Below are positions 46,690 to 64,000 of a stretch of 64,000 nt of DNA, in pieces. The position numbers and the translations under genes were made by a program. The first letter of the stretch is position 1. Every line of letters begins with the position of its first letter. The DNA is taken from positions 1 through 64,000 of IMG/VR virus record IMGVR_UViG_3300042484_002457. One strand, given 5' to 3'. The notes under the pieces were generated by a model that was given only the letters and a program-made list of their open reading frames with translations, did not search any database and had not been told where the DNA came from.

Positions 46690-46756
46690 TGCTGATGTTC
46701 CTCCAGAACGTTAGAGTAGTTGGGAACGCCAATTCCGCGAACTACACCTATATTTA
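46690..46756 (-). promoter_or_regulatory. Conserved two-hairpin endonuclease leader, copy B, with TAAATA promoter
   Basis: TAAATA-TAGGT-GTAGTT-CGC-GGAA-ttggcg-TTCC-C-AACTAC-TCTAAC-GTTC-tggag-GAAC-ATCAGC-A-ATG. Confidence 0.8.
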
Positions 46757-53034: not shown

Positions 53035-53103
53035 GCTGATTGCTCCTTGTTAGCGTTAGAGTAGTTGGGGAGGTGAGATACCCGCGAACTACACTTCTAT
53101 TTA
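53035..53103 (-). promoter_or_regulatory. Conserved two-hairpin endonuclease leader, copy C, with TAAATA promoter
   Basis: TAAATA-GAAGT-GTAGTT-CGC-GGG-tatctcacct-CCC-C-AACTAC-TCTAAC-GCT-aacaagg-AGC-A-ATCAGC-ATG. Confidence 0.8.
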
Positions 53104-54875: not shown

Positions 54876-56261
54876 ATGTTCCTCAGTTATATTACTTTGG
54901 CAGTTGCACTAAGCCTGTCAGTTATTGCCGCCTACTACTCCATTGCTGGCCTCACCGCAATCTTTGCCGCTGCTGTGATCCCTATTGTGATCATGGGTGG
55001 CATATTGGAAGTGGGCAAAGTTGTAGTTACCCTGTGGCTGCACGAGTACTGGCAACAGTGTCGTTTGCTGATGAAAATGTACCTGGTTCCAGCTGTGGCT
55101 GTGCTGATGCTGATCACCAGCATGGGCATTTTTGGTTTCTTGAGCAAGGCACACAGTGATCAAAGCATGGTATCAGGAGACGTGCAGGCCAAGATTGCAG
55201 TCTACGACGAAAAAATAAAAGTATCACAGGACAACATTGATGTTAATCGCAAAGCACTTAAACAGCTCGATGAGGCGGTGGATCAAAGCATGGCACGCTC
55301 GACAACAGAAACGGGTGCTGACAAAGCAGTGGCCATCCGTAAGTCGCAAGCAAAAGAAAGATCTAGACTACTGGCTGAAATTGCAGCCGAACAGAAAACA
55401 ATTAGTGCTCTTAGACAAGAACGAGCACCCATATCGGCCGAAGTACGAAAGGTTGAAGCCGAAGTTGGACCTATAAAATACATAGCCAAGTTGATCTACG
55501 GGGACAACCCCGATGCCAACCTGCTGGAAAAAGCAGTGACCTGGGTTATCATTGTGATTGTTGCGGTGTTTGATCCATTGGCTATCATGATGTTGTTGGC
55601 TGCAACAGAAAGTTTGAAGTGGGGGCGAGAAAAGCGATTGGCGCCGCAACCAACAGAATCCAACAGTGAACCAGAAGTAGAGGAACAGCCACCTGCAGAA
55701 CCAGAACCTGAAAAATCTATACTGGAACAACATCCGTACCTTACCCAAGGATTTGCGCACTTTACAGACTTGCAGCCCATAGTACACAAACCTGAGCCAA
55801 AAATTGATCCAGTGCCGGTTGAAGTTGCTCAGTCAGTAGAAGATGAAGAAGAGCGACCTGAGGTACAAGATGCAATTCGTCGATGGAAAGCAGAGAATCC
55901 CAACGACACATTGAAAAATCAGCGAGCACGCCTGGCACGTGGGGAAATTGACGAGCTGCCTTGGATGCAGTTGATCCAAGTATTGCCAGCTGCCACTAAC
56001 TCAGGGTATGGGAATCAGTTCCCGGGTAATGCCAACAAAGGCGACATATTTGTAAGAATTGACAAACTGCCCAATTTGGTCTATAAGTACAATGGTAATA
56101 ACTGGATTAAAATTGACAAAAATCTAACAGACAGTTACACTTATGATGTTGCCTACATTGATCACCTAATTGACAGAATCAGTTGTGGTGAGTACGACAC
56201 CGAGCTTTTGAGCGAAAGCGAAAAAGAACAAGTTAAACAACGTTTAGAAAATCGAGCATGA
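54876..56261 (+). CDS. Membrane-anchored coiled-coil protein
   Basis: N-terminal TM helices (AAYYSIAGL, TSMGIFGFLSKAH), coiled coil, EAEVGPIKYIA, TM VFDPLA; TAAATA 5 nt upstream. Confidence 0.75.
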   Translation: MFLSYITLAVALSLSVIAAYYSIAGLTAIFAAAVIPIVIMGGILEVGKVVVTLWLHEYWQQCRLLMKMYLVPAVAVLMLITSMGIFGFLSKAHSDQSMVSGDVQAKIAVYDEKIKVSQDNIDVNRKALKQLDEAVDQSMARSTTETGADKAVAIRKSQAKERSRLLAEIAAEQKTISALRQERAPISAEVRKVEAEVGPIKYIAKLIYGDNPDANLLEKAVTWVIIVIVAVFDPLAIMMLLAATESLKWGREKRLAPQPTESNSEPEVEEQPPAEPEPEKSILEQHPYLTQGFAHFTDLQPIVHKPEPKIDPVPVEVAQSVEDEEERPEVQDAIRRWKAENPNDTLKNQRARLARGEIDELPWMQLIQVLPAATNSGYGNQFPGNANKGDIFVRIDKLPNLVYKYNGNNWIKIDKNLTDSYTYDVAYIDHLIDRISCGEYDTELLSESEKEQVKQRLENRA

Positions 56262-57460
56262 AACAAACTGAAACCCAAGATACTTGCAACTTTTGCGGTA
56301 AACACAAAGATGCAGTGGCCAAGCTCATAGTAGGTGAAGATGTGGCCATCTGCAATGAGTGTGTGGAGTTGTGCCAAACGTTGTTGAAAGACGACACACC
56401 AGTCAAAGCTGCTGTTAATGCAATCCTAGATCCACTAAAAGTCAAACAACATCTAGACCAATACGTGATTGGACAAACACGAGCCAAGCAGTTGTTGAGC
56501 GTGGCTATTGTAAACCACTACAAGCGCATCAATAACCCCAATCCTGAAACTGAAATTGAAAAGACCAACATCCTCATGCTTGGCCCCACAGGCTCAGGAA
56601 AAACTTTGTTGGCTCGCAGTGTAGCACGTTATCTTGACGTGCCCTTTGTTATTGCTGATGCCACCAGTTTGACCGAAGCTGGTTATGTAGGCGATGATGT
56701 AGAAAGCTTGATCTCAAGACTTTTTGCTGCCGCTGAATACAGTGTTGAACGTTGCCAGCGTGGCATTGTGTTCATTGACGAAATTGACAAAATTAGTCGT
56801 CGCAGCGAAAGTGCCAGTATCACACGAGATGTCAGCGGCGAGGGTGTTCAGCAGGCCCTGCTCAAGCTGGTAGAAGGCACCAAGTGCCGCATCACTCCAC
56901 AGGGCGGGCGCAAGCACCCATCAGGTGAGACCGTGGAAATTGACACCACAAACATTTTGTTCATTGCTGGCGGAGCATTTGTGGGACTGGACAATCTTGT
57001 CAAGAGTCGTATCAAGGGCACCAGCATTGGGTTTAATGCACAGGTGGTCAAGGACTCCAAGCCCAGCTTGGATCATACCACACCTGAAGACCTTATCAAG
57101 TTTGGCATGATTCCTGAGTTTGTGGGGCGTTTCCCCAGTTGGGTGGCACTCAGTGAGCTTTCCAAGCAGGATCTTGTGCACATTCTGCAAGACGTCAAGC
57201 ACAGCTATGTGTCGCAGTATTCATGGTTGTTTGGTGTTGACGAAATTGAACTGGACTTTACACCTGAAAGCCTGGATCTCATTGCTGAACGCACTCTTGC
57301 TAACAAAACTGGAGCTCGTGGGCTGCACAGTGAACTAGAACGTGTGTTGCTGCCACACATGTTTTACCTTGCAGAGTATCGCAGACAAGGCATCAAGACC
57401 GTGACAATTGACGTTGAGCAAGTAAATACTCCAAAGGAGCTTCGAGTTGTAAATGGGTAA
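56258..57460 (+). CDS. clpX: ClpX ATPase
   Basis: C4 Zn-binding domain, [12 protein letters not shown] pore loop, [23 protein letters not shown] loop, GARGL. Confidence 0.96.
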
Positions 57461-58010: not shown

Positions 58011-58463
58011 ATGACAAAAACTTTAACTCTTCGTTCTTTCGACATTCCCGCAATCACCAAATTTGGTATCGGCTTTGATAACATGTTTGATGAACTCATG
58101 CGGGTAAGCGCCCAACAAGGCTCAACAAATTATCCACCCTACAACATTGTACAAATCAACGAAGATGAGTACATGATTAGTCTTGCTGTGGCTGGTTTTG
58201 GGCTTGATAATCTCTCAGTTACCAAGGACAAAAATTTCTTGATCATTGAAGGCAAAGAATATCAGTCTGACAGCGAAAAGATTGTGCCAAACTACCTGCA
58301 CAAAGGTATTAGCAATAGAGATTTCCGTCGTGAATTCCAACTTGCAGATCATGTGGAAATCAACAATGCGCACCTTGAACTTGGTATCTTGAATGTGCGT
58401 TTAAAGCGCGAAGTTCCTGAGGAAGCCAGGCCTAAAACTATTGCTATCACTTACAAAACTTGA
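58011..58463 (+). CDS. Small heat-shock protein (Hsp20/IbpA-like)
   Basis: IGFD, NYPPYNI, LAVAGF, YLHKGIS.R.F.R.F.LA, GIL. Confidence 0.93.
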   Translation: MTKTLTLRSFDIPAITKFGIGFDNMFDELMRVSAQQGSTNYPPYNIVQINEDEYMISLAVAGFGLDNLSVTKDKNFLIIEGKEYQSDSEKIVPNYLHKGISNRDFRREFQLADHVEINNAHLELGILNVRLKREVPEEARPKTIAITYKT

Positions 58464-58519
58464 TATAATAGTGTAAATACAGTGGCGGCGCAGTGCTGCC
58501 ACTGGCAACAAGGAACAAA

Positions 58520-58834
58520 ATGTCACAATCAGAAACACGTACAAAAATCAAACCCTTGGAATCTATCATTGAGCCTCCAATGTTTCGAGTAATTTATCTT
58601 AACGATAATACCACTACCTATGACTTTGTTGTTGAAACCTTGGTTGACTATTTTAACTACACTGAAGAAACTGCTGATCAGATCACTGTGGATATTCATG
58701 AATCAGGATCGGCTATTGTGGCTGTGCTGCCCTATGAAATTGCCGAACAAAAAGGCGTTGAAGTCACAATGTTGGCTCGTGCACAAAGCTATCCTTTGCA
58801 GATCAAGCTTGAGCCTGAATCAGTAACTCAGTAA
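58520..58834 (+). CDS. clpS: ClpS adaptor protein
   Basis: PPMFRVIYLNDNTT..DFVV, IH..G.A.V, EIAEQK, YPL. Confidence 0.9.
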   Translation: MSQSETRTKIKPLESIIEPPMFRVIYLNDNTTTYDFVVETLVDYFNYTEETADQITVDIHESGSAIVAVLPYEIAEQKGVEVTMLARAQSYPLQIKLEPESVTQ

Positions 58835-59642: not shown

Positions 59643-59996
59643 ATGAACATTATATTTGGCGATGCAGTAAAAGAGATACCCGATAGCTACACAATTCTAG
59701 AACTTGACACATTTCGACTACCAAATGCTCCGGATCCTGTGCCGTTTTATTGCTTGATTGAAAAGATTCCCATGGGAGACTTTGCAACCCTGGAGCACTG
59801 GAAAAAGATACATGCTGATTTGATCACACTGTATCGACAACAGCAGTGGAACTATTGCGAAAAAGCCCTGGAAAGCTTGTTGGGCAAATGGAACGGAGAA
59901 GTTGACACATTCTATCAAAGCTTGCTAGAGCGCATCAAAGACCACAAAGAAAACCCACCGCCCAAGGGCTGGGACGGCATACTAGACAAAAAATAA
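59643..59996 (+). CDS. Stand-alone domain resembling the C-terminal tail of CHASE2 class III adenylate cyclases
   Basis: LELD..., Y..QQW..C...L...W.G....FY....ER......PP..WDG; no cyclase catalytic core. Confidence 0.5.
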   Translation: MNIIFGDAVKEIPDSYTILELDTFRLPNAPDPVPFYCLIEKIPMGDFATLEHWKKIHADLITLYRQQQWNYCEKALESLLGKWNGEVDTFYQSLLERIKDHKENPPPKGWDGILDKK

Positions 59997-60017: not shown

Positions 60018-60047
60018 AAACCCCGCGTAAATACTATGCGGGGTTTT
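60018..60047 (+). terminator. Terminator-like hairpin with an embedded TAAATA late promoter
   Basis: AAACCCCGCGTA-aatac-TATGCGGGGTTTT; TAAATA 60028-60033. Confidence 0.75.
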
Positions 60048-60049
60048 CC

Positions 60050-60487
60050 ATGAAAAACATAATAATAATAGCCTTGCTTGCTGTTTCAACACGGGCCGGA
60101 GCCACGGAGCTAGTACATCAATTCAATTCGCCTGCCTTTTCAGGAATGGGCTACAGTAGTCACGTGCTTACAATTGAGCAACTGGAAGCTACCCGTCGTC
60201 AAAAACTACGAGAAGAAGAAGCCAGCAGGCTGGCCCGGGCCGAGCTTGCGGCCAAACAAACCAACATAGCTAAATTCCTAGTCAACGTAGAAAGTCGCAT
60301 CTATGCTCAGTTGAGCAAGCAGTTGGCAGACTCGTTATTCAGCGGTGGCGGCACCACTGGCAGTTTGGATTTTCAAGGCACCAACATCAGCTGGGTCAAG
60401 ACTTCTACTGATGTCACCATGACCATTCTAGAAAGCAATGGTAATCGCACAGAGATCACTGTGCCACTAGCGAGTTTTGCATTTTGA
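60050..60487 (+). CDS. csgF: Curli assembly protein CsgF-like
   Basis: Signal peptide, then ELVHQFNSPAFSG (compare CsgF FQFRNPNFGG); adjacent to csgG. Confidence 0.75.
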   Translation: MKNIIIIALLAVSTRAGATELVHQFNSPAFSGMGYSSHVLTIEQLEATRRQKLREEEASRLARAELAAKQTNIAKFLVNVESRIYAQLSKQLADSLFSGGGTTGSLDFQGTNISWVKTSTDVTMTILESNGNRTEITVPLASFAF

Positions 60488-61311
60488 TGAAAGCACTATT
60501 TTTATCATTGTTGTTGGCCTTGACTGGGTGTGCCAGTCTGGACCAAACTCAGTTTGATTCGCAGCCACCTCAGTTGGTGCCGCGACAAAACTTGTTGGCC
60601 ATGTTACCCGAACTGGATGGTCCACGAATACCTATTGCTGTATATGGTTTCACAGACAAGACTGGTCAGAAAAAAAGCAGTGAGAAGTTGGCGCTGTTTT
60701 CTACAGCAGTAACACAAGGTGCCGAAGTGTTCTTGATCAAGGCCTTACAAGATACTCCCAACTGGTTCACAGTGGTAGAACGTGTGAGTCTAGACAATCT
60801 GATCAAAGAGCGCCAGCTGATTAGAAATCAGCGCGAAGTATACGAAGGCAAAGAAGCCAAGCCGCTCAAGCCATTGCTGGTAGCCGGCCTTATGATTGAA
60901 GGTGGCATCATAGGTTATGACACCAACATCACGTCAGGCGGCAGTGGTGCTAGAATACTAGGCATTGGGGCCAGTACACAATATCGTGTGGATGAAATTG
61001 TTATTTCCATGCGAGTAGTTTCAGTTAACACTGGGGAAGTGTTGCTGAATACGGCTGTGAGTAAAACTGTTTTTAGCACAGCTCACAACCAAGGAGTTCT
61101 CAAATTTGTCGATGTTGGCACAATCAGCATTGAACTTGAGAATGGGGCTGCTATCAACGAGCCTACAACATACGCAGTTCGAATAGCCATTGAACAAGCG
61201 GTGTATGAAATGATCCAAGAAGGGGCAAAACGAAAACTTTGGTCATACAAAAAGGGTACACCCCCAAGGAGTGGCGTAGAGGATAGTAACTCACCCACAA
61301 AACAAAAATGA
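60487..61311 (+). CDS. csgG: Curli secretion channel CsgG lipoprotein
   Basis: Lipobox LTGC; AVYGF.DKTGQ.K, FSTAVTQGA, WF.VVER..LDNL.KERQLIR, EGGIIGYD.N..SGG.GAR.LGIG, NEP. Confidence 0.92.
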   Translation: MKALFLSLLLALTGCASLDQTQFDSQPPQLVPRQNLLAMLPELDGPRIPIAVYGFTDKTGQKKSSEKLALFSTAVTQGAEVFLIKALQDTPNWFTVVERVSLDNLIKERQLIRNQREVYEGKEAKPLKPLLVAGLMIEGGIIGYDTNITSGGSGARILGIGASTQYRVDEIVISMRVVSVNTGEVLLNTAVSKTVFSTAHNQGVLKFVDVGTISIELENGAAINEPTTYAVRIAIEQAVYEMIQEGAKRKLWSYKKGTPPRSGVEDSNSPTKQK

Positions 61312-61934
61312 AAATAACAAGATCTCTCAAAGGGACAATATTTGCATTGGGCATGATGGCGTTATCGCATGCACAGGCTGCAAATGAAATTTATATAGAG
61401 CAAGTTGGCGATAATGCCACTGTTACGTTGAAACAAGCTGGCAACAACAACACTATTGGTGATGCCCTGGCGCCAGCCTTTATTGGCGGTGGACAGAACA
61501 CAGTATACATTGAACAATCAGGCAGTGGCAATCAGCTGGCTATGTTGGTCAACGGTGCTGGCACCAATGTCACTTCCATAGTCACAGGCGACAGCAACCA
61601 ACAGACCATCACATGCGGAACCAGCATCAGCGCCAGCTGTAGCGGATCTGCAATCACGCATACCATAACAGGTGACAACAACGATGTGCAAAGTTTGCTG
61701 GGCACCACCGGAGGAGCACACACCAGCAATATCACAGTGCTAGGGGATTACAACCATGTCACACACAACAGTTCAGGATCAGGCGCCAACTCCGCCACAA
61801 TCAATGTTAGTGGGTCAGGTTCTGGTGCAACTCCCAACGCAATTACTGTGTCTCAAAGCGGTATGAATACTCAGAGTGCCACTGTCAATGCTTCAGGCAA
61901 TAACCTTAACATTAGCATTATTCAGTCTGACTAA
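61308..61934 (+). CDS. Curlin-repeat (CsgA/CsgB-like) secreted protein
   Basis: Signal peptide; repeats IEQVGDN, LKQAGNNN, IEQSGSGN, TGDSN, TGDNN, LGDYN. Confidence 0.72.
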   Translation: MKITRSLKGTIFALGMMALSHAQAANEIYIEQVGDNATVTLKQAGNNNTIGDALAPAFIGGGQNTVYIEQSGSGNQLAMLVNGAGTNVTSIVTGDSNQQTITCGTSISASCSGSAITHTITGDNNDVQSLLGTTGGAHTSNITVLGDYNHVTHNSSGSGANSATINVSGSGSGATPNAITVSQSGMNTQSATVNASGNNLNISIIQSD

Positions 61935-62964
61935 TGCCTGGGCCGGCGTAGGCAAGGTCACAGAAATGTCGGGGCCGACAGAAATAATACGGGCTCAAAA
62001 AAGCATATCCAGTGCTGTGAATACTGCGGTGGAAATGAATGACACCATTGTCACGGCTCGATCCCGAGCTGAACTGACTTTTGAAGATGCCACCAAAGTA
62101 AAAATTACCGAGCAGTCAAAGCTGATAATTGATGACTTCGTATACGACCCCAAGCAAGGAACAGGCAAGTTGGCCATGAAAGTGGCCTTGGGCACAGCTA
62201 GATATGCATCGGGCCAAATAGCCAAAAATAATCCTCAACAGGTATCAGTCAAAACCCCTACAGCGTCAATTACTGTCAGGGGCACAGACTTTTCAATGAC
62301 AGTGGACGAGTTAGGTCGTAGCCTTGTTATGCTACTGCCCAGCTGCGATGACAAAACGTGTGTGACTGGGGCTATTGAAGTCAGTAACGAGGCTGGCAGC
62401 ATTTTGATGACCCAGGCCTATCAAGCCACCTTGGTTTCATCAGCAGACACTCTGCCTACAAGACCAGTTGTGTTAACCATTGATCAAGCCAACATCAACA
62501 ACATGTTGATCATTAGCCGACCTCGGGAAATCAGCGAAGACAACCGAGACAACAAACGCGATGTTCGAACAGCCTTGGACGTGAATTTTCTTGATCAAGA
62601 CTTTTTAAAACCTGCAGACTTGGACAATCAGCTGGATGCGTTTAATCAACTGGATCGCAATGAACTAGAAGATGACCTGTTGCCCAACGCATTGGATGCT
62701 GTAAATGCTGCTTTGTCAGCCACGCAAGAAGCCATGTCAACTACACTCAGCATGCTACCGGGCTATGACGCAGGCTCAGGGTTGAAATGGCGCACAACCG
62801 ATTCAGAACAGCTGGTTTTGACTAGATACAGCACTCATATTTTTGAACTAACTGTGCCCCGAGAACAAGGGGCAATCTTGGATCTACAACAGGACGGTAT
62901 TCCTGTGTATCAAAAAATCAACACAGGTGGAACCACCACCATCACAGTTATCCAGAGTCAATAA
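61888..62964 (+). CDS. Secreted FecR-domain protein
   Basis: Signal peptide MLQAITLTLALFSLTNAWA; D.I.T...AELTFED.T.V.ITE.S.L.ID.FVYD, TPTASI.VRGTDF. Confidence 0.82.
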   Translation: MLQAITLTLALFSLTNAWAGVGKVTEMSGPTEIIRAQKSISSAVNTAVEMNDTIVTARSRAELTFEDATKVKITEQSKLIIDDFVYDPKQGTGKLAMKVALGTARYASGQIAKNNPQQVSVKTPTASITVRGTDFSMTVDELGRSLVMLLPSCDDKTCVTGAIEVSNEAGSILMTQAYQATLVSSADTLPTRPVVLTIDQANINNMLIISRPREISEDNRDNKRDVRTALDVNFLDQDFLKPADLDNQLDAFNQLDRNELEDDLLPNALDAVNAALSATQEAMSTTLSMLPGYDAGSGLKWRTTDSEQLVLTRYSTHIFELTVPREQGAILDLQQDGIPVYQKINTGGTTTITVIQSQ

Positions 62965-62991
62965 ATACTATTATAAAAACAAGGAGCCATT

Positions 62992-63273
62992 GTGGGTGAA
63001 TTTTTTAAATTGGTAGCCGAAGTAGGCTTCCCGATAGCAGCAGCTATAGGTGCAGGATATTTTGTATTCTTGACATTGAAATTTATTTTGGCTGGCGTAA
63101 CCAGCAGCGTAAATGGTATCAAAGGCATCATTGGAGCACTGGACAATCGAGTCAAAACCATGAATCACGACGTGATACGCATTGACACTATTGTGAGCAA
63201 TGCTCTTGGACTTAGGCCTGATGTGGACCGTATTGCACGAGCAGATGGCAAGAACGATGCTCGGAGAGACTGA
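62992..63273 (+). CDS. Single-TM coiled-coil protein (holin-like), paralog 1
   Basis: AAGGAG SD; GFPIAAA.G.GYFVF; LDNRVKTMNHDVIRID. Confidence 0.65.
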   Translation: MGEFFKLVAEVGFPIAAAIGAGYFVFLTLKFILAGVTSSVNGIKGIIGALDNRVKTMNHDVIRIDTIVSNALGLRPDVDRIARADGKNDARRD

Positions 63274-63455
63274 TGTTGTACTTTGATTATCATTGGGACC
63301 TAGACAAAGATGTTATGATTCCGGATCCTGAGTTGAATACTGACCAATTAGATTGGAAACCCGGGGACTTGTTTCAGGTTCAAGAATTCAATGGGAAGAA
63401 ATTTCTTTGCAGAGTTGACCCTTTGGTTAAATTTATACGAGATGGGGTAAAATAA
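63273..63455 (+). CDS. Small hypothetical protein
   Basis: 60 aa; L.WKPGDLF.V. Confidence 0.55.
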   Translation: MLYFDYHWDLDKDVMIPDPELNTDQLDWKPGDLFQVQEFNGKKFLCRVDPLVKFIRDGVK

Positions 63456-63778
63456 TGGACATAGCTGAACTCATAAACAAATATGGTTTCCCAATCGTGG
63501 CAGCTGGTGGCACCGGGTATATGATATACTATGTGTGGGAGTGGGCCACAAAAGAAATCAAGCCTGTGCTGAGCGAAGCCAACACTACTCTGATTGCCTT
63601 GATTGATCGCATTCGTATGCTGGACAATGACTTGATACGTTTGAATCAAAAAGTCAACACTGTGCTTCATTTGCGTGGCAAAATCATTGAAAGCGAACGT
63701 GTACTAGAAGCTCAAAAAGTAGACAATGAAGCTGAAAAGAAGTTTGAAGCTGCGGTCAAGACTGACACACAGAAATAA
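63455..63778 (+). CDS. Single-TM coiled-coil protein (holin-like), paralog 2
   Basis: GFPIVAAGG.GY.IYYVW; LIDRIRMLDNDLIRL. Confidence 0.65.
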   Translation: MDIAELINKYGFPIVAAGGTGYMIYYVWEWATKEIKPVLSEANTTLIALIDRIRMLDNDLIRLNQKVNTVLHLRGKIIESERVLEAQKVDNEAEKKFEAAVKTDTQK

Positions 63779-63781
63779 TCA

Positions 63782-64000
63782 ATGCTAGAAATCATCCTAA
63801 CTTTGGTAATGACCCACATTACCATTATATGTGTTACTCTGTATCTACATCGCGGACAAGCACATCGTGGCATTGAATTTGATCCTGTACTAGAGCATTT
63901 TATGCGTGCTTGGCTGTGGCTCACAACAGGCATGGTAACCAAACAGTGGGTGGCCATACATCGCAAACATCATAGATACTGTGAGCAATCCAACGATCCG
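63782..64000 (+). CDS. Fatty-acid (delta-9, DesA-like) desaturase, 3' end outside the window
   Basis: MLEIILTLVMTHITIICVTLYLHRGQAH...WLWLTTGMVTKQWVAIHRKHH...DP; His boxes HxxxxH and HxxHH. Confidence 0.88.
   Translation, partial: MLEIILTLVMTHITIICVTLYLHRGQAHRGIEFDPVLEHFMRAWLWLTTGMVTKQWVAIHRKHHRYCEQSNDP

What the first reader, a model, noticed from the sequence alone, without database searches (positions are those of the whole stretch)
60018..62964. Curli-like secretion operon (CsgF, CsgG, curlin-repeat protein, FecR) gated to late infection
Seen: four exported proteins with intact signal peptides or lipobox, including a curlin-repeat substrate candidate. Upstream, a terminator-like hairpin contains TAAATA, so read-through would stop and only late transcripts enter. 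Established: CsgG-CsgF form the outer-membrane curli channel, and csgF/csgG have been noted in some marine myoviruses with unresolved function. Inference: a late outer-membrane pore and amyloid-like module for lysis, cell aggregation, superinfection sensing or trans-envelope signalling via the FecR protein.
Basis: partly seen in the sequence, partly recalled or inferred. Interest (0 to 1): 0.65.

Follow-up and report, generated by a model that had tools for sequence, protein, structure and literature searches.

The report
Phage curli secretion module, late-gated
A lake-water giant T4-like phage carries the curli (type VIII) secretion gene set already described in marine SAR11 phages, and its first gene sits behind a conserved RNA hairpin with a late-type promoter in the loop, which probably keeps this outer-membrane pore from being made early in infection.

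Summary
Window 60050-62964 encodes CsgF, CsgG (lipobox LTGC), a curlin-repeat beta-solenoid and a periplasmic FecR-domain protein, all with export signals. They are preceded by a 12-bp hairpin (60018-46) whose loop region carries TAAATA.

The gene set is not new. The same module, with FecR, an adenylate cyclase and two small membrane proteins, is published for marine pelagiphages (PMC7029224, PMC9004378, PMC9599517). All those parts are here too: the small proteins at 62992-63778 and a CHASE2 cyclase just outside the window.

New here:
- The carrier is a freshwater T4-like jumbo phage; its complete relative is 364 kb.
- TAAATA is the most enriched motif upstream of genes. It precedes sheath, portal and baseplate genes in a relative that encodes a gp55-type late sigma factor.
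- In 33 distinct relatives the csgF leader folds into a hairpin that encloses TAAATA and pairs the ribosome-binding site, with covarying stems. This is the layout of the T4 lysozyme (e), soc, 49 and I-TevI leaders.

Late gating is therefore supported, but by hiding the ribosome-binding site rather than by termination; the U-run is short and not conserved. Function of the module remains inferred. Verdict: new member of a known kind, with a modest new regulatory finding.

The parts
59643..59996 (+). orf117: stand-alone paralogue of the C-terminal tail of the phage CHASE2 adenylate cyclase; last gene before the hairpin
   Evidence: BLASTP against the genome's own cyclase, residues 568-677: E 3e-13, 26% identity. 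Found upstream of csgF in several relatives.
60018..60046 (+). Leader hairpin: 5' arm 60018-60029, loop AAUAC 60030-60034, 3' arm 60035-60046. The 3' arm holds the only purine-rich SD-like run, GGGG (60040-60043).
   Evidence: MFE -18.7 kcal/mol, z -4.3. It is the strongest TAAATA-containing leader hairpin in this genome and in the complete relative. Conserved with covarying stems in relatives.
60028..60036 (+). TAAATACTA: T4-late-type promoter core (TAAATA 60028-60033), 16 nt before the csgF ATG. The start site is inferred at about 60039-60040, inside the 3' arm.
   Evidence: TAAATAC is the most enriched 7-mer upstream of ORFs: 19 of 25 copies, 14.5x. The same holds in the 364-kb relative, where TAAATA precedes sheath, portal, gp6- and gp8-like genes and a gp55-like sigma is encoded.
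60050..60487 (+). csgF: signal peptide, then the conserved mature N-terminus ELVHQFNSPAFSG (compare E. coli FQFRNPNFGG)
   Evidence: PF10614, E 8.5e-13, full length; phrog_35372, E 5e-44. N-termini aligned.
60487..61311 (+). csgG: outer-membrane lipoprotein channel (lipobox LTGC). The ATG at 60487 overlaps the csgF stop (TGATG); an in-frame TTG lies at 60484.
   Evidence: PF03783, E 7e-52. E 1e-47 over residues 4-256 to E. coli CsgG 3x2r/6l7a. Lipobox conserved in 22 of 22 sequences. Start context shown.
61308..61934 (+). Curlin-repeat (CsgA/B-like) beta-solenoid with a signal peptide. About 8 Q-x-G-x-x-N repeats and two invariant Cys. The ATGA overlaps the csgG stop. It is the only copy in the genome.
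   Evidence: Profile hit to 8C50 Pontibacter CsgA, E 1.9e-10. AF2 model pLDDT 85.5. VIA Z 16.7 to 8c50_A and Z 10.6 to E. coli CsgA 8enq. Single copy.
61876..62964 (+). Periplasmic FecR-domain protein. Signal peptide, N-terminal FecR beta-domain, LD-repeat helical linker, C-terminal beta-domain, two invariant Cys. The start (GTG 61876 or ATG 61888) lies inside the curlin gene.
   Evidence: PF04773, E 5e-11; phrog_37870, E 3.5e-98. Alignment A1 has 63% mean column identity. The AF2 model is only moderate, pLDDT 61.
62962..62970 (+). Second TAAATACTA promoter core. Its TAA is the fecR stop codon. It lies 24 nt (counted from the TAAATA core) before the p93 GTG, with AAGGAG between them.
   Evidence: 38 of 44 distinct p93-leading upstream regions in relatives carry TAAATA.
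62992..63273 (+). p93: small single-pass membrane protein with a conserved helix (NHDVIRID). Probably one of the 'HK' genes of the published viral module.
   Evidence: phrog_18771, E 1.5e-35. In 50,697 phage records, homologues occur only in the six that carry the curli cassette. Family alignment.
63273..63455 (+). p60: small ORF between the two paralogues, kept only in some relatives (about 20 of the 80 loci)
63455..63778 (+). p107: paralogue of p93 (conserved helix LDNDLIRLNQKV)
   Evidence: phrog_18771, E 1e-30. Co-occurs with the cassette in about 50 of 80 viral loci within 6 kb, and in HTVC008M and Melnitz.

Best explanation
This is a phage copy of the viral type VIII (curli) secretion module, made late in infection.

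Shown:
- csgF, csgG, one curlin-repeat gene and a periplasmic FecR-domain gene form a tightly overlapping unit.
- Two small membrane proteins lie downstream. A CHASE2 adenylate cyclase lies on the opposite strand at genome positions 65171-67222. A paralogue of the cyclase tail lies upstream.
- The whole set travels together in many phages.

Inferred mechanism:
- Transcripts reading through from upstream fold the leader into a hairpin that pairs the ribosome-binding site, and may partly terminate there, so no CsgF or CsgG is made early.
- When the phage's gp55-type late sigma factor takes over, transcription starts a few bases after the TAAATA in the hairpin loop. That mRNA lacks the 5' arm, the binding site is free, and the coupled genes are translated.
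- The Sec and Lol pathways then place CsgG in the outer membrane. CsgF docks in its barrel, and the curlin-repeat protein is the likely exported substrate.
- The FecR-domain protein most likely partners the periplasmic CHASE2 domain of the cyclase, as FecR-CHASE2 pairs do in bacteria. This would link the state of the envelope or cell surface to cAMP in the infected cell.
For: Gene identities.

Module linkage:
- The F-G-curlin-FecR order is kept wherever the contig reaches far enough, in 80 IMG/VR loci and in HTVC008M and Melnitz.
- The cyclase homologue is 40% identical over its full length and has CHASE2 plus cyclase domains.
- p93/p107 are found only in curli-bearing phage records.
- orf117 matches the cyclase tail.

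Promoter:
- TAAATA enrichment upstream of ORFs.
- A gp55-like sigma and a T4 gp23-type capsid in the complete relative.
- TAAATA ahead of sheath, portal and baseplate genes.
- 49 of 63 distinct csgF upstream regions carry TAAATA.

Hairpin:
- Window hairpin, z -4.3.
- 33 csgF leaders have mean dG -13.8 and median z -2.7. 57 other TAAATA leaders have mean dG -6.0 and median z 0.07. Mann-Whitney p about 1e-8.
- Covariation 0.286 against 0.184 for shuffles (0 of 500 reach it) and at most 0.194 when slid.

Precedents: T4 e, soc, 49 and I-TevI (PMC3014915). FecR-CHASE2 pairing in bacteria (PMC5192318) and in bacterial loci found here.
Against: - There are no expression data. 20 lake metagenomes hold the stretch, but no RNA run does.
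- TAAATA also precedes non-structural genes (ClpS, nrdA), so it may not be strictly late.
- The 33 leaders are related sequences, so the statistics overstate independence.
- The G-U versus A-C count does not separate an RNA structure from a DNA palindrome.
- About a fifth of relatives lack the hairpin, because csgF directly follows p107 there.
- The curlin has two invariant cysteines. If oxidised in the periplasm, these could hinder passage through CsgG.
- No CsgE and no separate nucleator gene are present.
- The FecR-CHASE2 contact has no direct support.
Confidence: 0.55

Rival explanations
1. Pore-only, lysis-timing device (the published Melnitz idea). CsgG/CsgF would act as a gated outer-membrane pore or pinholin-like element that helps time lysis. 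The curlin-like protein would not be a secreted fibre, and p93/p107 would act as holin/antiholin-like membrane proteins.
For: - Proposed for Melnitz (PMC9004378).
- T4 uses the same hairpin gating for its lysozyme gene, which is harmful if made early.
- p107 has a weak holin PHROG hit, E 9e-4.
- The CsgG constriction differs from E. coli: YPASNF is replaced by SEKLALF.
Against: - A conserved, signal-peptide-bearing curlin homologue sits in every cassette.
- The one cell-wall hydrolase homologue located (by BLAST with a Melnitz query) lies about 45 kb away, at about 106.7 kb.
- CsgG spans only the outer membrane, so it cannot depolarise the inner membrane.
- The holin hit is marginal and no PDB or Pfam support was found.
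Confidence: 0.15
2. The hairpin is simply the intrinsic terminator of orf117, and TAAATA in its loop is incidental. csgF would be transcribed from elsewhere, with no temporal gating.
For: GC-rich 12-bp stem flanked by AAA and UUUU.
Against: - The U-run is only 4 nt and is missing in most relatives, while the hairpin, the TAAATA and the SD pairing persist with different stem sequences.
- The ATG follows 3 nt after the stem, and no other SD-like run lies outside the stem.
- TAAATA is invariant in all 37 aligned leaders.
- The simple terminator scan does not call the site.
Confidence: 0.1
3. Uptake channel. An ungated CsgG pore (no CsgE) would let nutrients or cofactors into the infected cell, with FecR and the cyclase sensing them.
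For: Suggested in PMC7029224 and PMC9599517. CsgE is absent from this genome and from the complete relative.
Against: This does not explain the conserved curlin and CsgF. Late expression leaves little time for nutrient benefit. The FecR protein lacks every iron-signalling partner: no ECF sigma and no anti-sigma domain.
Confidence: 0.1

Closest known systems
Viral T8SS (curli) module of marine pelagiphages: HTVC008M, Melnitz, HTVC023P-type podophages (PMC7029224, PMC9004378, PMC9599517)
   Same: Same genes and core order: csgF-csgG-curlin-FecR, plus two small membrane proteins and a CHASE2 adenylate cyclase. Identities to HTVC008M/Melnitz are 38-61% depending on the protein: CsgG 48-52%, FecR 38-40%, p93 52-61%, cyclase 40%.
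   Different: - The carrier is a freshwater T4-like jumbo phage. Its complete relative is 364 kb, and that relative's capsid protein is 62-66% identical to those of the PA5oct and 121Q groups.
- The small proteins lie downstream rather than upstream.
- The cyclase is convergent and separated by a desaturase-like gene.
- There is no second curlin.
- An extra cyclase-tail paralogue is present.
- The leader hairpin has not, to my knowledge, been described.
Escherichia coli curli system (csgBAC / csgDEFG)
   Same: CsgG lipoprotein channel (E 1e-47), a CsgF with a related N-terminal motif, and a curlin-repeat beta-solenoid substrate.
   Different: No CsgE, CsgC, CsgD or separate CsgB. The constriction residues are altered. 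The curlin carries two conserved cysteines. The module is joined to FecR and CHASE2-cyclase genes that bacterial curli operons lack.
Phage T4 leaders of genes e (lysozyme), soc, 49 and I-TevI (PMC3014915)
   Same: A late promoter core sits within or next to the 5' strand of a hairpin that sequesters the SD/AUG. Only transcripts starting at that promoter are translatable.
   Different: The core here is TAAATA(C)TA rather than TATAAATA. It sits in the loop and upper stem. The gated gene is a secretion operon. None of this has been tested experimentally here.
Bacterial FecR-domain / CHASE2 sensor pairs (Burkholderia BiofilmReg operon, P. aeruginosa PA4035/36; PMC5192318)
   Same: A secreted FecR-domain protein is encoded beside a membrane sensor with a periplasmic CHASE2 domain. 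Bacterial loci found here also place FecR next to CHASE2 cyclases.
   Different: The output domain is a class III cyclase, not a histidine kinase. There is no LysM domain. The pair is joined to a CsgG/CsgF channel.

Membership tests
Type VIII secretion (curli) system | CsgG outer-membrane lipoprotein channel | tested here: met
   PF03783, E 7e-52. E 1e-47 to E. coli CsgG structures. Lipobox conserved.
Type VIII secretion (curli) system | CsgF accessory protein with an N-terminal CsgG-binding motif | tested here: met
   PF10614, E 8.5e-13 over the full model; conserved ELVHQFNSPAFSG. A profile search found no PDB CsgF chain, so the docking mode was not tested.
Type VIII secretion (curli) system | Sec-exported curlin-repeat subunit (CsgA/CsgB) | tested here: met
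   The single-sequence Pfam hit is below cut-off. The profile gives E 1.9e-10 to 8C50 CsgA, and the beta-solenoid model gives Z 16.7. Only one copy is present, so there is no distinct nucleator. Secretion and amyloid formation were not tested.
Type VIII secretion (curli) system | Periplasmic gate/chaperone CsgE (enterobacterial type) | tested here: not met
   PF10627 is absent from the 209-kb genome and from the complete 364-kb relative. CsgE is also absent from the published viral modules and from alphaproteobacterial curli systems, as stated in PMC9599517.
Viral T8SS module (pelagiphage type) | csgF-csgG-curlin followed by FecR, with an adenylate cyclase and small 'HK' membrane genes nearby | tested here: met
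   Order and orientation of the accessory genes differ.
T4 gene e-type translational gating | Late-type promoter core placed so that its transcript lacks the 5' arm of an SD-sequestering hairpin | tested here: met
   Geometry in the window. Conserved in relatives. The transcription start site is inferred, not mapped.
T4 gene e-type translational gating | Early read-through transcripts exist and are poorly translated | not testable with these tools
   No RNA runs hold the sequence.
Intrinsic (rho-independent) terminator | GC-rich stem followed by a U-tract of about 5-8 | tested here: inconclusive
   The stem is present. Only UUUU follows the GC core, and three of those U pair with upstream A's. 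The scan does not call it. The U-run is absent in most relatives.
FecR anti-sigma factor (FecI-FecR-FecA signalling) | N-terminal cytoplasmic anti-sigma domain with a TM segment, a partner ECF sigma, and a TonB-dependent transducer | tested here: not met
   Only the periplasmic FecR domain is present (residues 56-145), behind a cleavable signal peptide. No Sigma70_r2 family member in either genome.

The most novel reading that the evidence does not exclude
The module is an outside-in sensory device made by the phage late in infection. The CsgG/CsgF channel and surface curlin would report an envelope or surface event, such as a superinfecting phage or cell contact, through the periplasmic FecR-domain protein to the CHASE2 adenylate cyclase. 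The cyclase-tail paralogue and the two small membrane proteins would modulate it. The resulting cAMP would adjust late development or lysis timing, a cyclic-nucleotide counterpart of T4 lysis inhibition.
Probability: 0.12. Interest if true: 0.8.

Novelty: new member of a known kind. Interest (0 to 1): 0.4.

Why it matters
The function of viral curli modules is an open question in marine phage ecology; proposals include aggregation, a superinfection shield, lysis timing and uptake. This locus adds three things:
- The module is not confined to phages of streamlined marine hosts. It is also carried by a clade of freshwater T4-like jumbo phages.
- It is probably expressed late, and is actively kept untranslated on early transcripts. 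This argues against roles that need early expression, such as classical superinfection exclusion or nutrient uptake. It fits a product that is harmful if made early.
- It comes with a fixed partner set: FecR, a CHASE2 cyclase, a cyclase-tail paralogue and two small membrane proteins. That points to a signalling branch.

The leader hairpin gives a simple handle that can be tested with reporter fusions.

Tried and rejected
- **Complex prediction**, FecR domain (24-205) with the CHASE2 periplasmic domain (25-312): no verdict, score 0.00. This is evidence neither for nor against binding.
- **Foldseek 'pdb'** on the curlin model gave only generic beta-helix hits with E > 0.01. The wide VIA search was needed to recover CsgA.
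- **AF2 model of the FecR protein** was too weak (pLDDT 61, pTM 0.33) to justify a fold search.
- **CsgF profile against PDB sequences**: no CsgF chain found.
- **p93/p107**: no significant Pfam, PDB or PADLOC match. YvrJ hits are weak at best, and no HisKA signal supports the published 'HK' label. The atlas shows virus-only clusters.
- **Megablast** of the locus against cultured phages: no match.
- **TATAAATA** (the exact T4 late consensus) is rare, 2 on the + strand and 5 on the - strand, so the strict T4 motif was rejected in favour of NTAAATA.
- **G-U versus A-C counts**, meant to separate an RNA from a DNA structure, were not significant.
- **Rfam**: nothing between 45.5 and 64 kb.
- **PADLOC PycC hits** to the cyclase reflect general class III cyclase homology and were not taken as evidence for a defence system.
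- **The PA5oct transcriptome paper** defines only sigma70-like promoters, so it does not help date TAAATA.
- **RNA evidence**: no RNA-seq run holds the sequence.
Full report
**1. What is at the coordinates**

The window is the first 64 kb of a 209,543-bp IMG/VR viral contig that CheckV rates 58% complete. Between 60050 and 62964, four same-strand ORFs overlap or abut:
- csgF, 60050-60487.
- csgG, with its ATG at 60487 sharing a base with the csgF stop.
- A curlin-like gene, 61308-61934, with ATGA overlapping the csgG stop.
- A FecR-domain gene, 61876-62964, which starts inside the curlin gene.

Pfam gives CsgF at 8.5e-13, CsgG at 7e-52 and FecR at 5e-11. Curlin_rpt scores only 17 bits against a cut-off of 20.7. 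PHROG families already exist for three of the four proteins.

CsgG aligns over its whole length with the solved E. coli CsgG at E 1e-47. The constriction segment YPASNF is replaced by SEKLALF.

The weak curlin call was settled in three steps:
- A profile of 20 homologues hits the solved curli subunit of Pontibacter korlensis (8C50) at E 1.9e-10.
- The AlphaFold model (pLDDT 85.5) is a stack of short strands.
- An exhaustive structural search ranks 8c50_A first (Z 16.7) and also finds E. coli CsgA 8enq (Z 10.6).

Signal peptides and the lipobox L(S/T)GC are conserved in every relative aligned.

**2. The hairpin**

Positions 60018-60046 fold into a 12-bp stem with loop AAUAC, at -18.7 kcal/mol and z -4.3. 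TAAATA occupies 60028-60033. The csgF ATG begins 3 nt after the stem. The only purine-rich run that could serve as a Shine-Dalgarno sequence (GGGG, 60040-60043) lies in the 3' arm. Only UUUU follows the GC core, and the terminator scan does not call the site.

**3. The gene set is already known**

tblastn against 50,697 phage records finds CsgG, the curlin, FecR and the small protein p93 only in Pelagibacter phage HTVC008M and the four Methylophilales phage Melnitz isolates. The one exception is a 1.5-kb Salmonella phage fragment that matches CsgG alone. Their annotation shows the same order, csgF-csgG-curlin-FecR. It is followed there by a second curlin and an adenylate/guanylate cyclase, and preceded by two 93-aa hypothetical proteins.

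The literature covers this:
- Zaragoza-Solas et al. 2020 reported the cluster (PMC7029224).
- Buchholz et al. 2022 proposed a lysis-timing pore (PMC9004378).
- Wittmers et al. 2022 described the full viral T8SS, including CsgA/B, FecR, the adenylate cyclase and preceding 'HK' genes. They found it in podo- and myo-pelagiphages, widespread in the ocean and present in metatranscriptomes (PMC9599517).

**4. The full module here**

- Downstream of fecR lie p93 (62992-63273) and its paralogue p107 (63455-63778), both phrog_18771.
- A full-length homologue of the Melnitz cyclase (40% identity) sits just outside the window at genome positions 65171-67222 on the minus strand. It has a periplasmic CHASE2 domain and a class III cyclase domain.
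- The gene directly upstream of the hairpin, orf117 (59643-59996), is a paralogue of that cyclase's C-terminal tail, E 3e-13.
- There is no CsgE, no second curlin and no ECF sigma, either in this genome or in the complete relative.
- The FecR protein has only the periplasmic FecR domain behind a signal peptide. It is not a FecR anti-sigma factor.

**5. Distribution**

A scan of IMG/VR with CsgG returned 80 loci. Wherever the contig reaches far enough, csgF, csgG, the curlin and fecR are in the same order, and p93/p107 lie within 6 kb in about 50 of the loci. Several contigs are 343-364 kb.

One of them, G001, is 364,404 bp with terminal repeats, and its CsgG is 92% identical to the window's. 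It encodes:
- a gp55-type late sigma factor, E 6e-13 against Melnitz gp55;
- a T4 gp23-type capsid protein, E 7e-98;
- portal, sheath, TerL, prohead protease, and gp46/47, gp4 and gp15 homologues.

Its capsid protein is 62-66% identical to those of the PA5oct, Vibrio 2.275.O and 121Q-type jumbo phages. Twenty lake-water metagenomes hold the window's stretch.

In 185,579 prokaryote species genomes, the full-length FecR protein was found only on 11 MAG contigs of 5-83 kb. Their taxonomic labels are discordant, and nearly all carry the rest of the module, so they are most simply phage contigs binned by mistake. Genuine chromosomes match only the FecR domain. That domain sometimes lies beside a CHASE2 cyclase, but never beside CsgG or CsgF.

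Some relatives fuse an SH3_3 domain to the C-terminus of CsgG.

**6. Is TAAATA a promoter, and is it late?**

The exact T4 consensus TATAAATA is rare. However, TAAATAC is the most enriched 7-mer in the 80 nt upstream of ORFs: 19 of 25 copies, 14.5-fold. NTAAATA heads the same list in G001.

In G001 the motif precedes the sheath, portal, gp6-like and gp8-like genes. A sigma70-type extended -10 (TGCTATAAT) is enriched separately.

With a gp55 homologue present, TAAATA is best read as this lineage's late promoter core. The caveat is that it also precedes ClpS and nrdA, and no expression data exist.

The exact 9-mer TAAATACTA occurs five times in the genome, all on the + strand. Four of the five lie 12-24 nt before a start codon, counted from the TAAATA core, and these include csgF and p93.

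**7. The leader is conserved as a structure**

- Of 63 distinct csgF upstream regions, 49 carry TAAATA. Most of the rest are cases where csgF directly follows p107.
- 38 of 44 distinct upstream regions of the leading p93/p107 gene carry TAAATA.
- In 33 distinct leaders with TAAATA 12-35 nt from the ATG, the fold encloses the motif and pairs the SD (GGGAG, AGGA or GGGG) with sequence upstream of the motif.
- The stem sequences differ completely between subgroups.
- These 33 leaders have mean dG -13.8 kcal/mol and median z -2.7. For 57 other TAAATA leaders of the two genomes the figures are -6.0 and 0.07. Mann-Whitney p is about 1e-8.
- On an ungapped, unselected alignment of 37 leaders with one rigid 12-pair structure, 59.2% of cells pair against 51.3 +/- 1.8% in shuffles (0 of 500 reach it) and 36-50% when slid. 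The covariation score is 0.286 against 0.184.
- The csgF leader is the strongest such hairpin in both genomes.

Caveats: the sequences are related, and G-U versus A-C counts cannot separate RNA from DNA pairing.

This layout is that of the T4 leaders of e, soc, 49 and I-TevI. There, early read-through RNA hides the ribosome-binding site, and late transcripts that start inside the structure are translated (PMC3014915). The U-run that makes the window's hairpin look like a terminator is absent in most relatives.

**8. Mechanism and function**

Late, hairpin-gated expression of an outer-membrane channel with its own curlin substrate is the best-supported reading. The reasons are the conserved curlin homologue with a signal peptide, the translationally coupled genes, and the T4 precedent for gating products that are harmful early.

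The FecR/CHASE2-cyclase branch is inferred from gene linkage in phages and from FecR-CHASE2 pairs in bacteria (PMC5192318). What the module does for the phage is not decided by any result here. Candidates are surface fibres for aggregation or shielding, lysis timing, and envelope sensing through cAMP.

**9. Verdict**

This is a new member of a published kind of viral module, found in a new phage lineage and habitat. It adds one modest new regulatory finding, the conserved late-promoter-in-hairpin leader, and a few new accessory features. Interest is moderate.

Noticed in passing
window 58493-58834 (+) and 56258-57460 (+): The phage encodes a ClpS adaptor homologue (PF02617, E 7.6e-25). A 400-aa AAA+ ATPase gene lies two ORFs upstream, with its best hit to phrog_4339. 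Together these hint at phage manipulation of Clp/N-degron proteolysis. ClpS also lies upstream of the curli cassette in many relatives.
   Followed up: partly
whole genome; e.g. window 982, 7352, 25509, 34550, 34975: About a third of the TAAATA sites upstream of ORFs lie only 3-8 nt before the ATG (17 of 55). The portal gene of the relative is one example. If transcription starts 5-7 nt after the motif, these would be leaderless or nearly leaderless late mRNAs.
   Followed up: no
window 46711-46747 (-) and 53056-53094 (-); similar copies near genome 150.2 kb and 168.7 kb: A repeated intergenic element, GTGTAGTTCGCG-(variable)-CCAACTACTCTAA, lies just downstream of a TAAATA and ahead of minus-strand genes. 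There are 2 exact pattern matches in the window against 0 expected, and no Rfam family matches. It is possibly a shared leader or regulatory stem-loop.
   Followed up: partly
L018:6001-7128, L065:5959-7206 and other relatives: Several relatives carry CsgG with a C-terminal extension of about 110-150 aa. In the two tested it contains a bacterial SH3_3 domain (E 2.8e-10). I do not know of this fusion in bacterial CsgG. It may tether the channel to peptidoglycan.
   Followed up: partly
window 59643-59996: orf117 is a free-standing copy of the cyclase's C-terminal tail. The same similarity shows up against cyclases in bacterial and MAG loci. It could be a regulator or decoy of the cyclase.
   Followed up: partly
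window 63782-64000 onward: An ORF with histidine-box-like motifs (HRGQAH, HRKHH) looks like a fatty-acid desaturase. It separates the small membrane genes from the convergent cyclase. Its homologues are present in close relatives. It was not checked against Pfam.
   Followed up: no
L111-L121 (genome contigs): Eleven MAG contigs carry the phage module, nearly all of them the whole set. They are labelled Flavobacteriaceae, Pelagibacter, Polynucleobacter, Rhodobacteraceae, Caulobacteraceae, Legionellales, Pirellulales and Bacteroidetes. They are probably phage contigs binned into host or unrelated genomes, a caution for taxon-based counts of curli genes.
   Followed up: partly
window 58441-58469 and genome-wide: An extended -10 sigma70-type motif (TGCTATAAT) is separately enriched upstream of ORFs. 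These are likely early promoters. The copy ahead of ClpS faces toward the curli locus and could supply the early read-through transcripts that the hairpin would silence.
   Followed up: no
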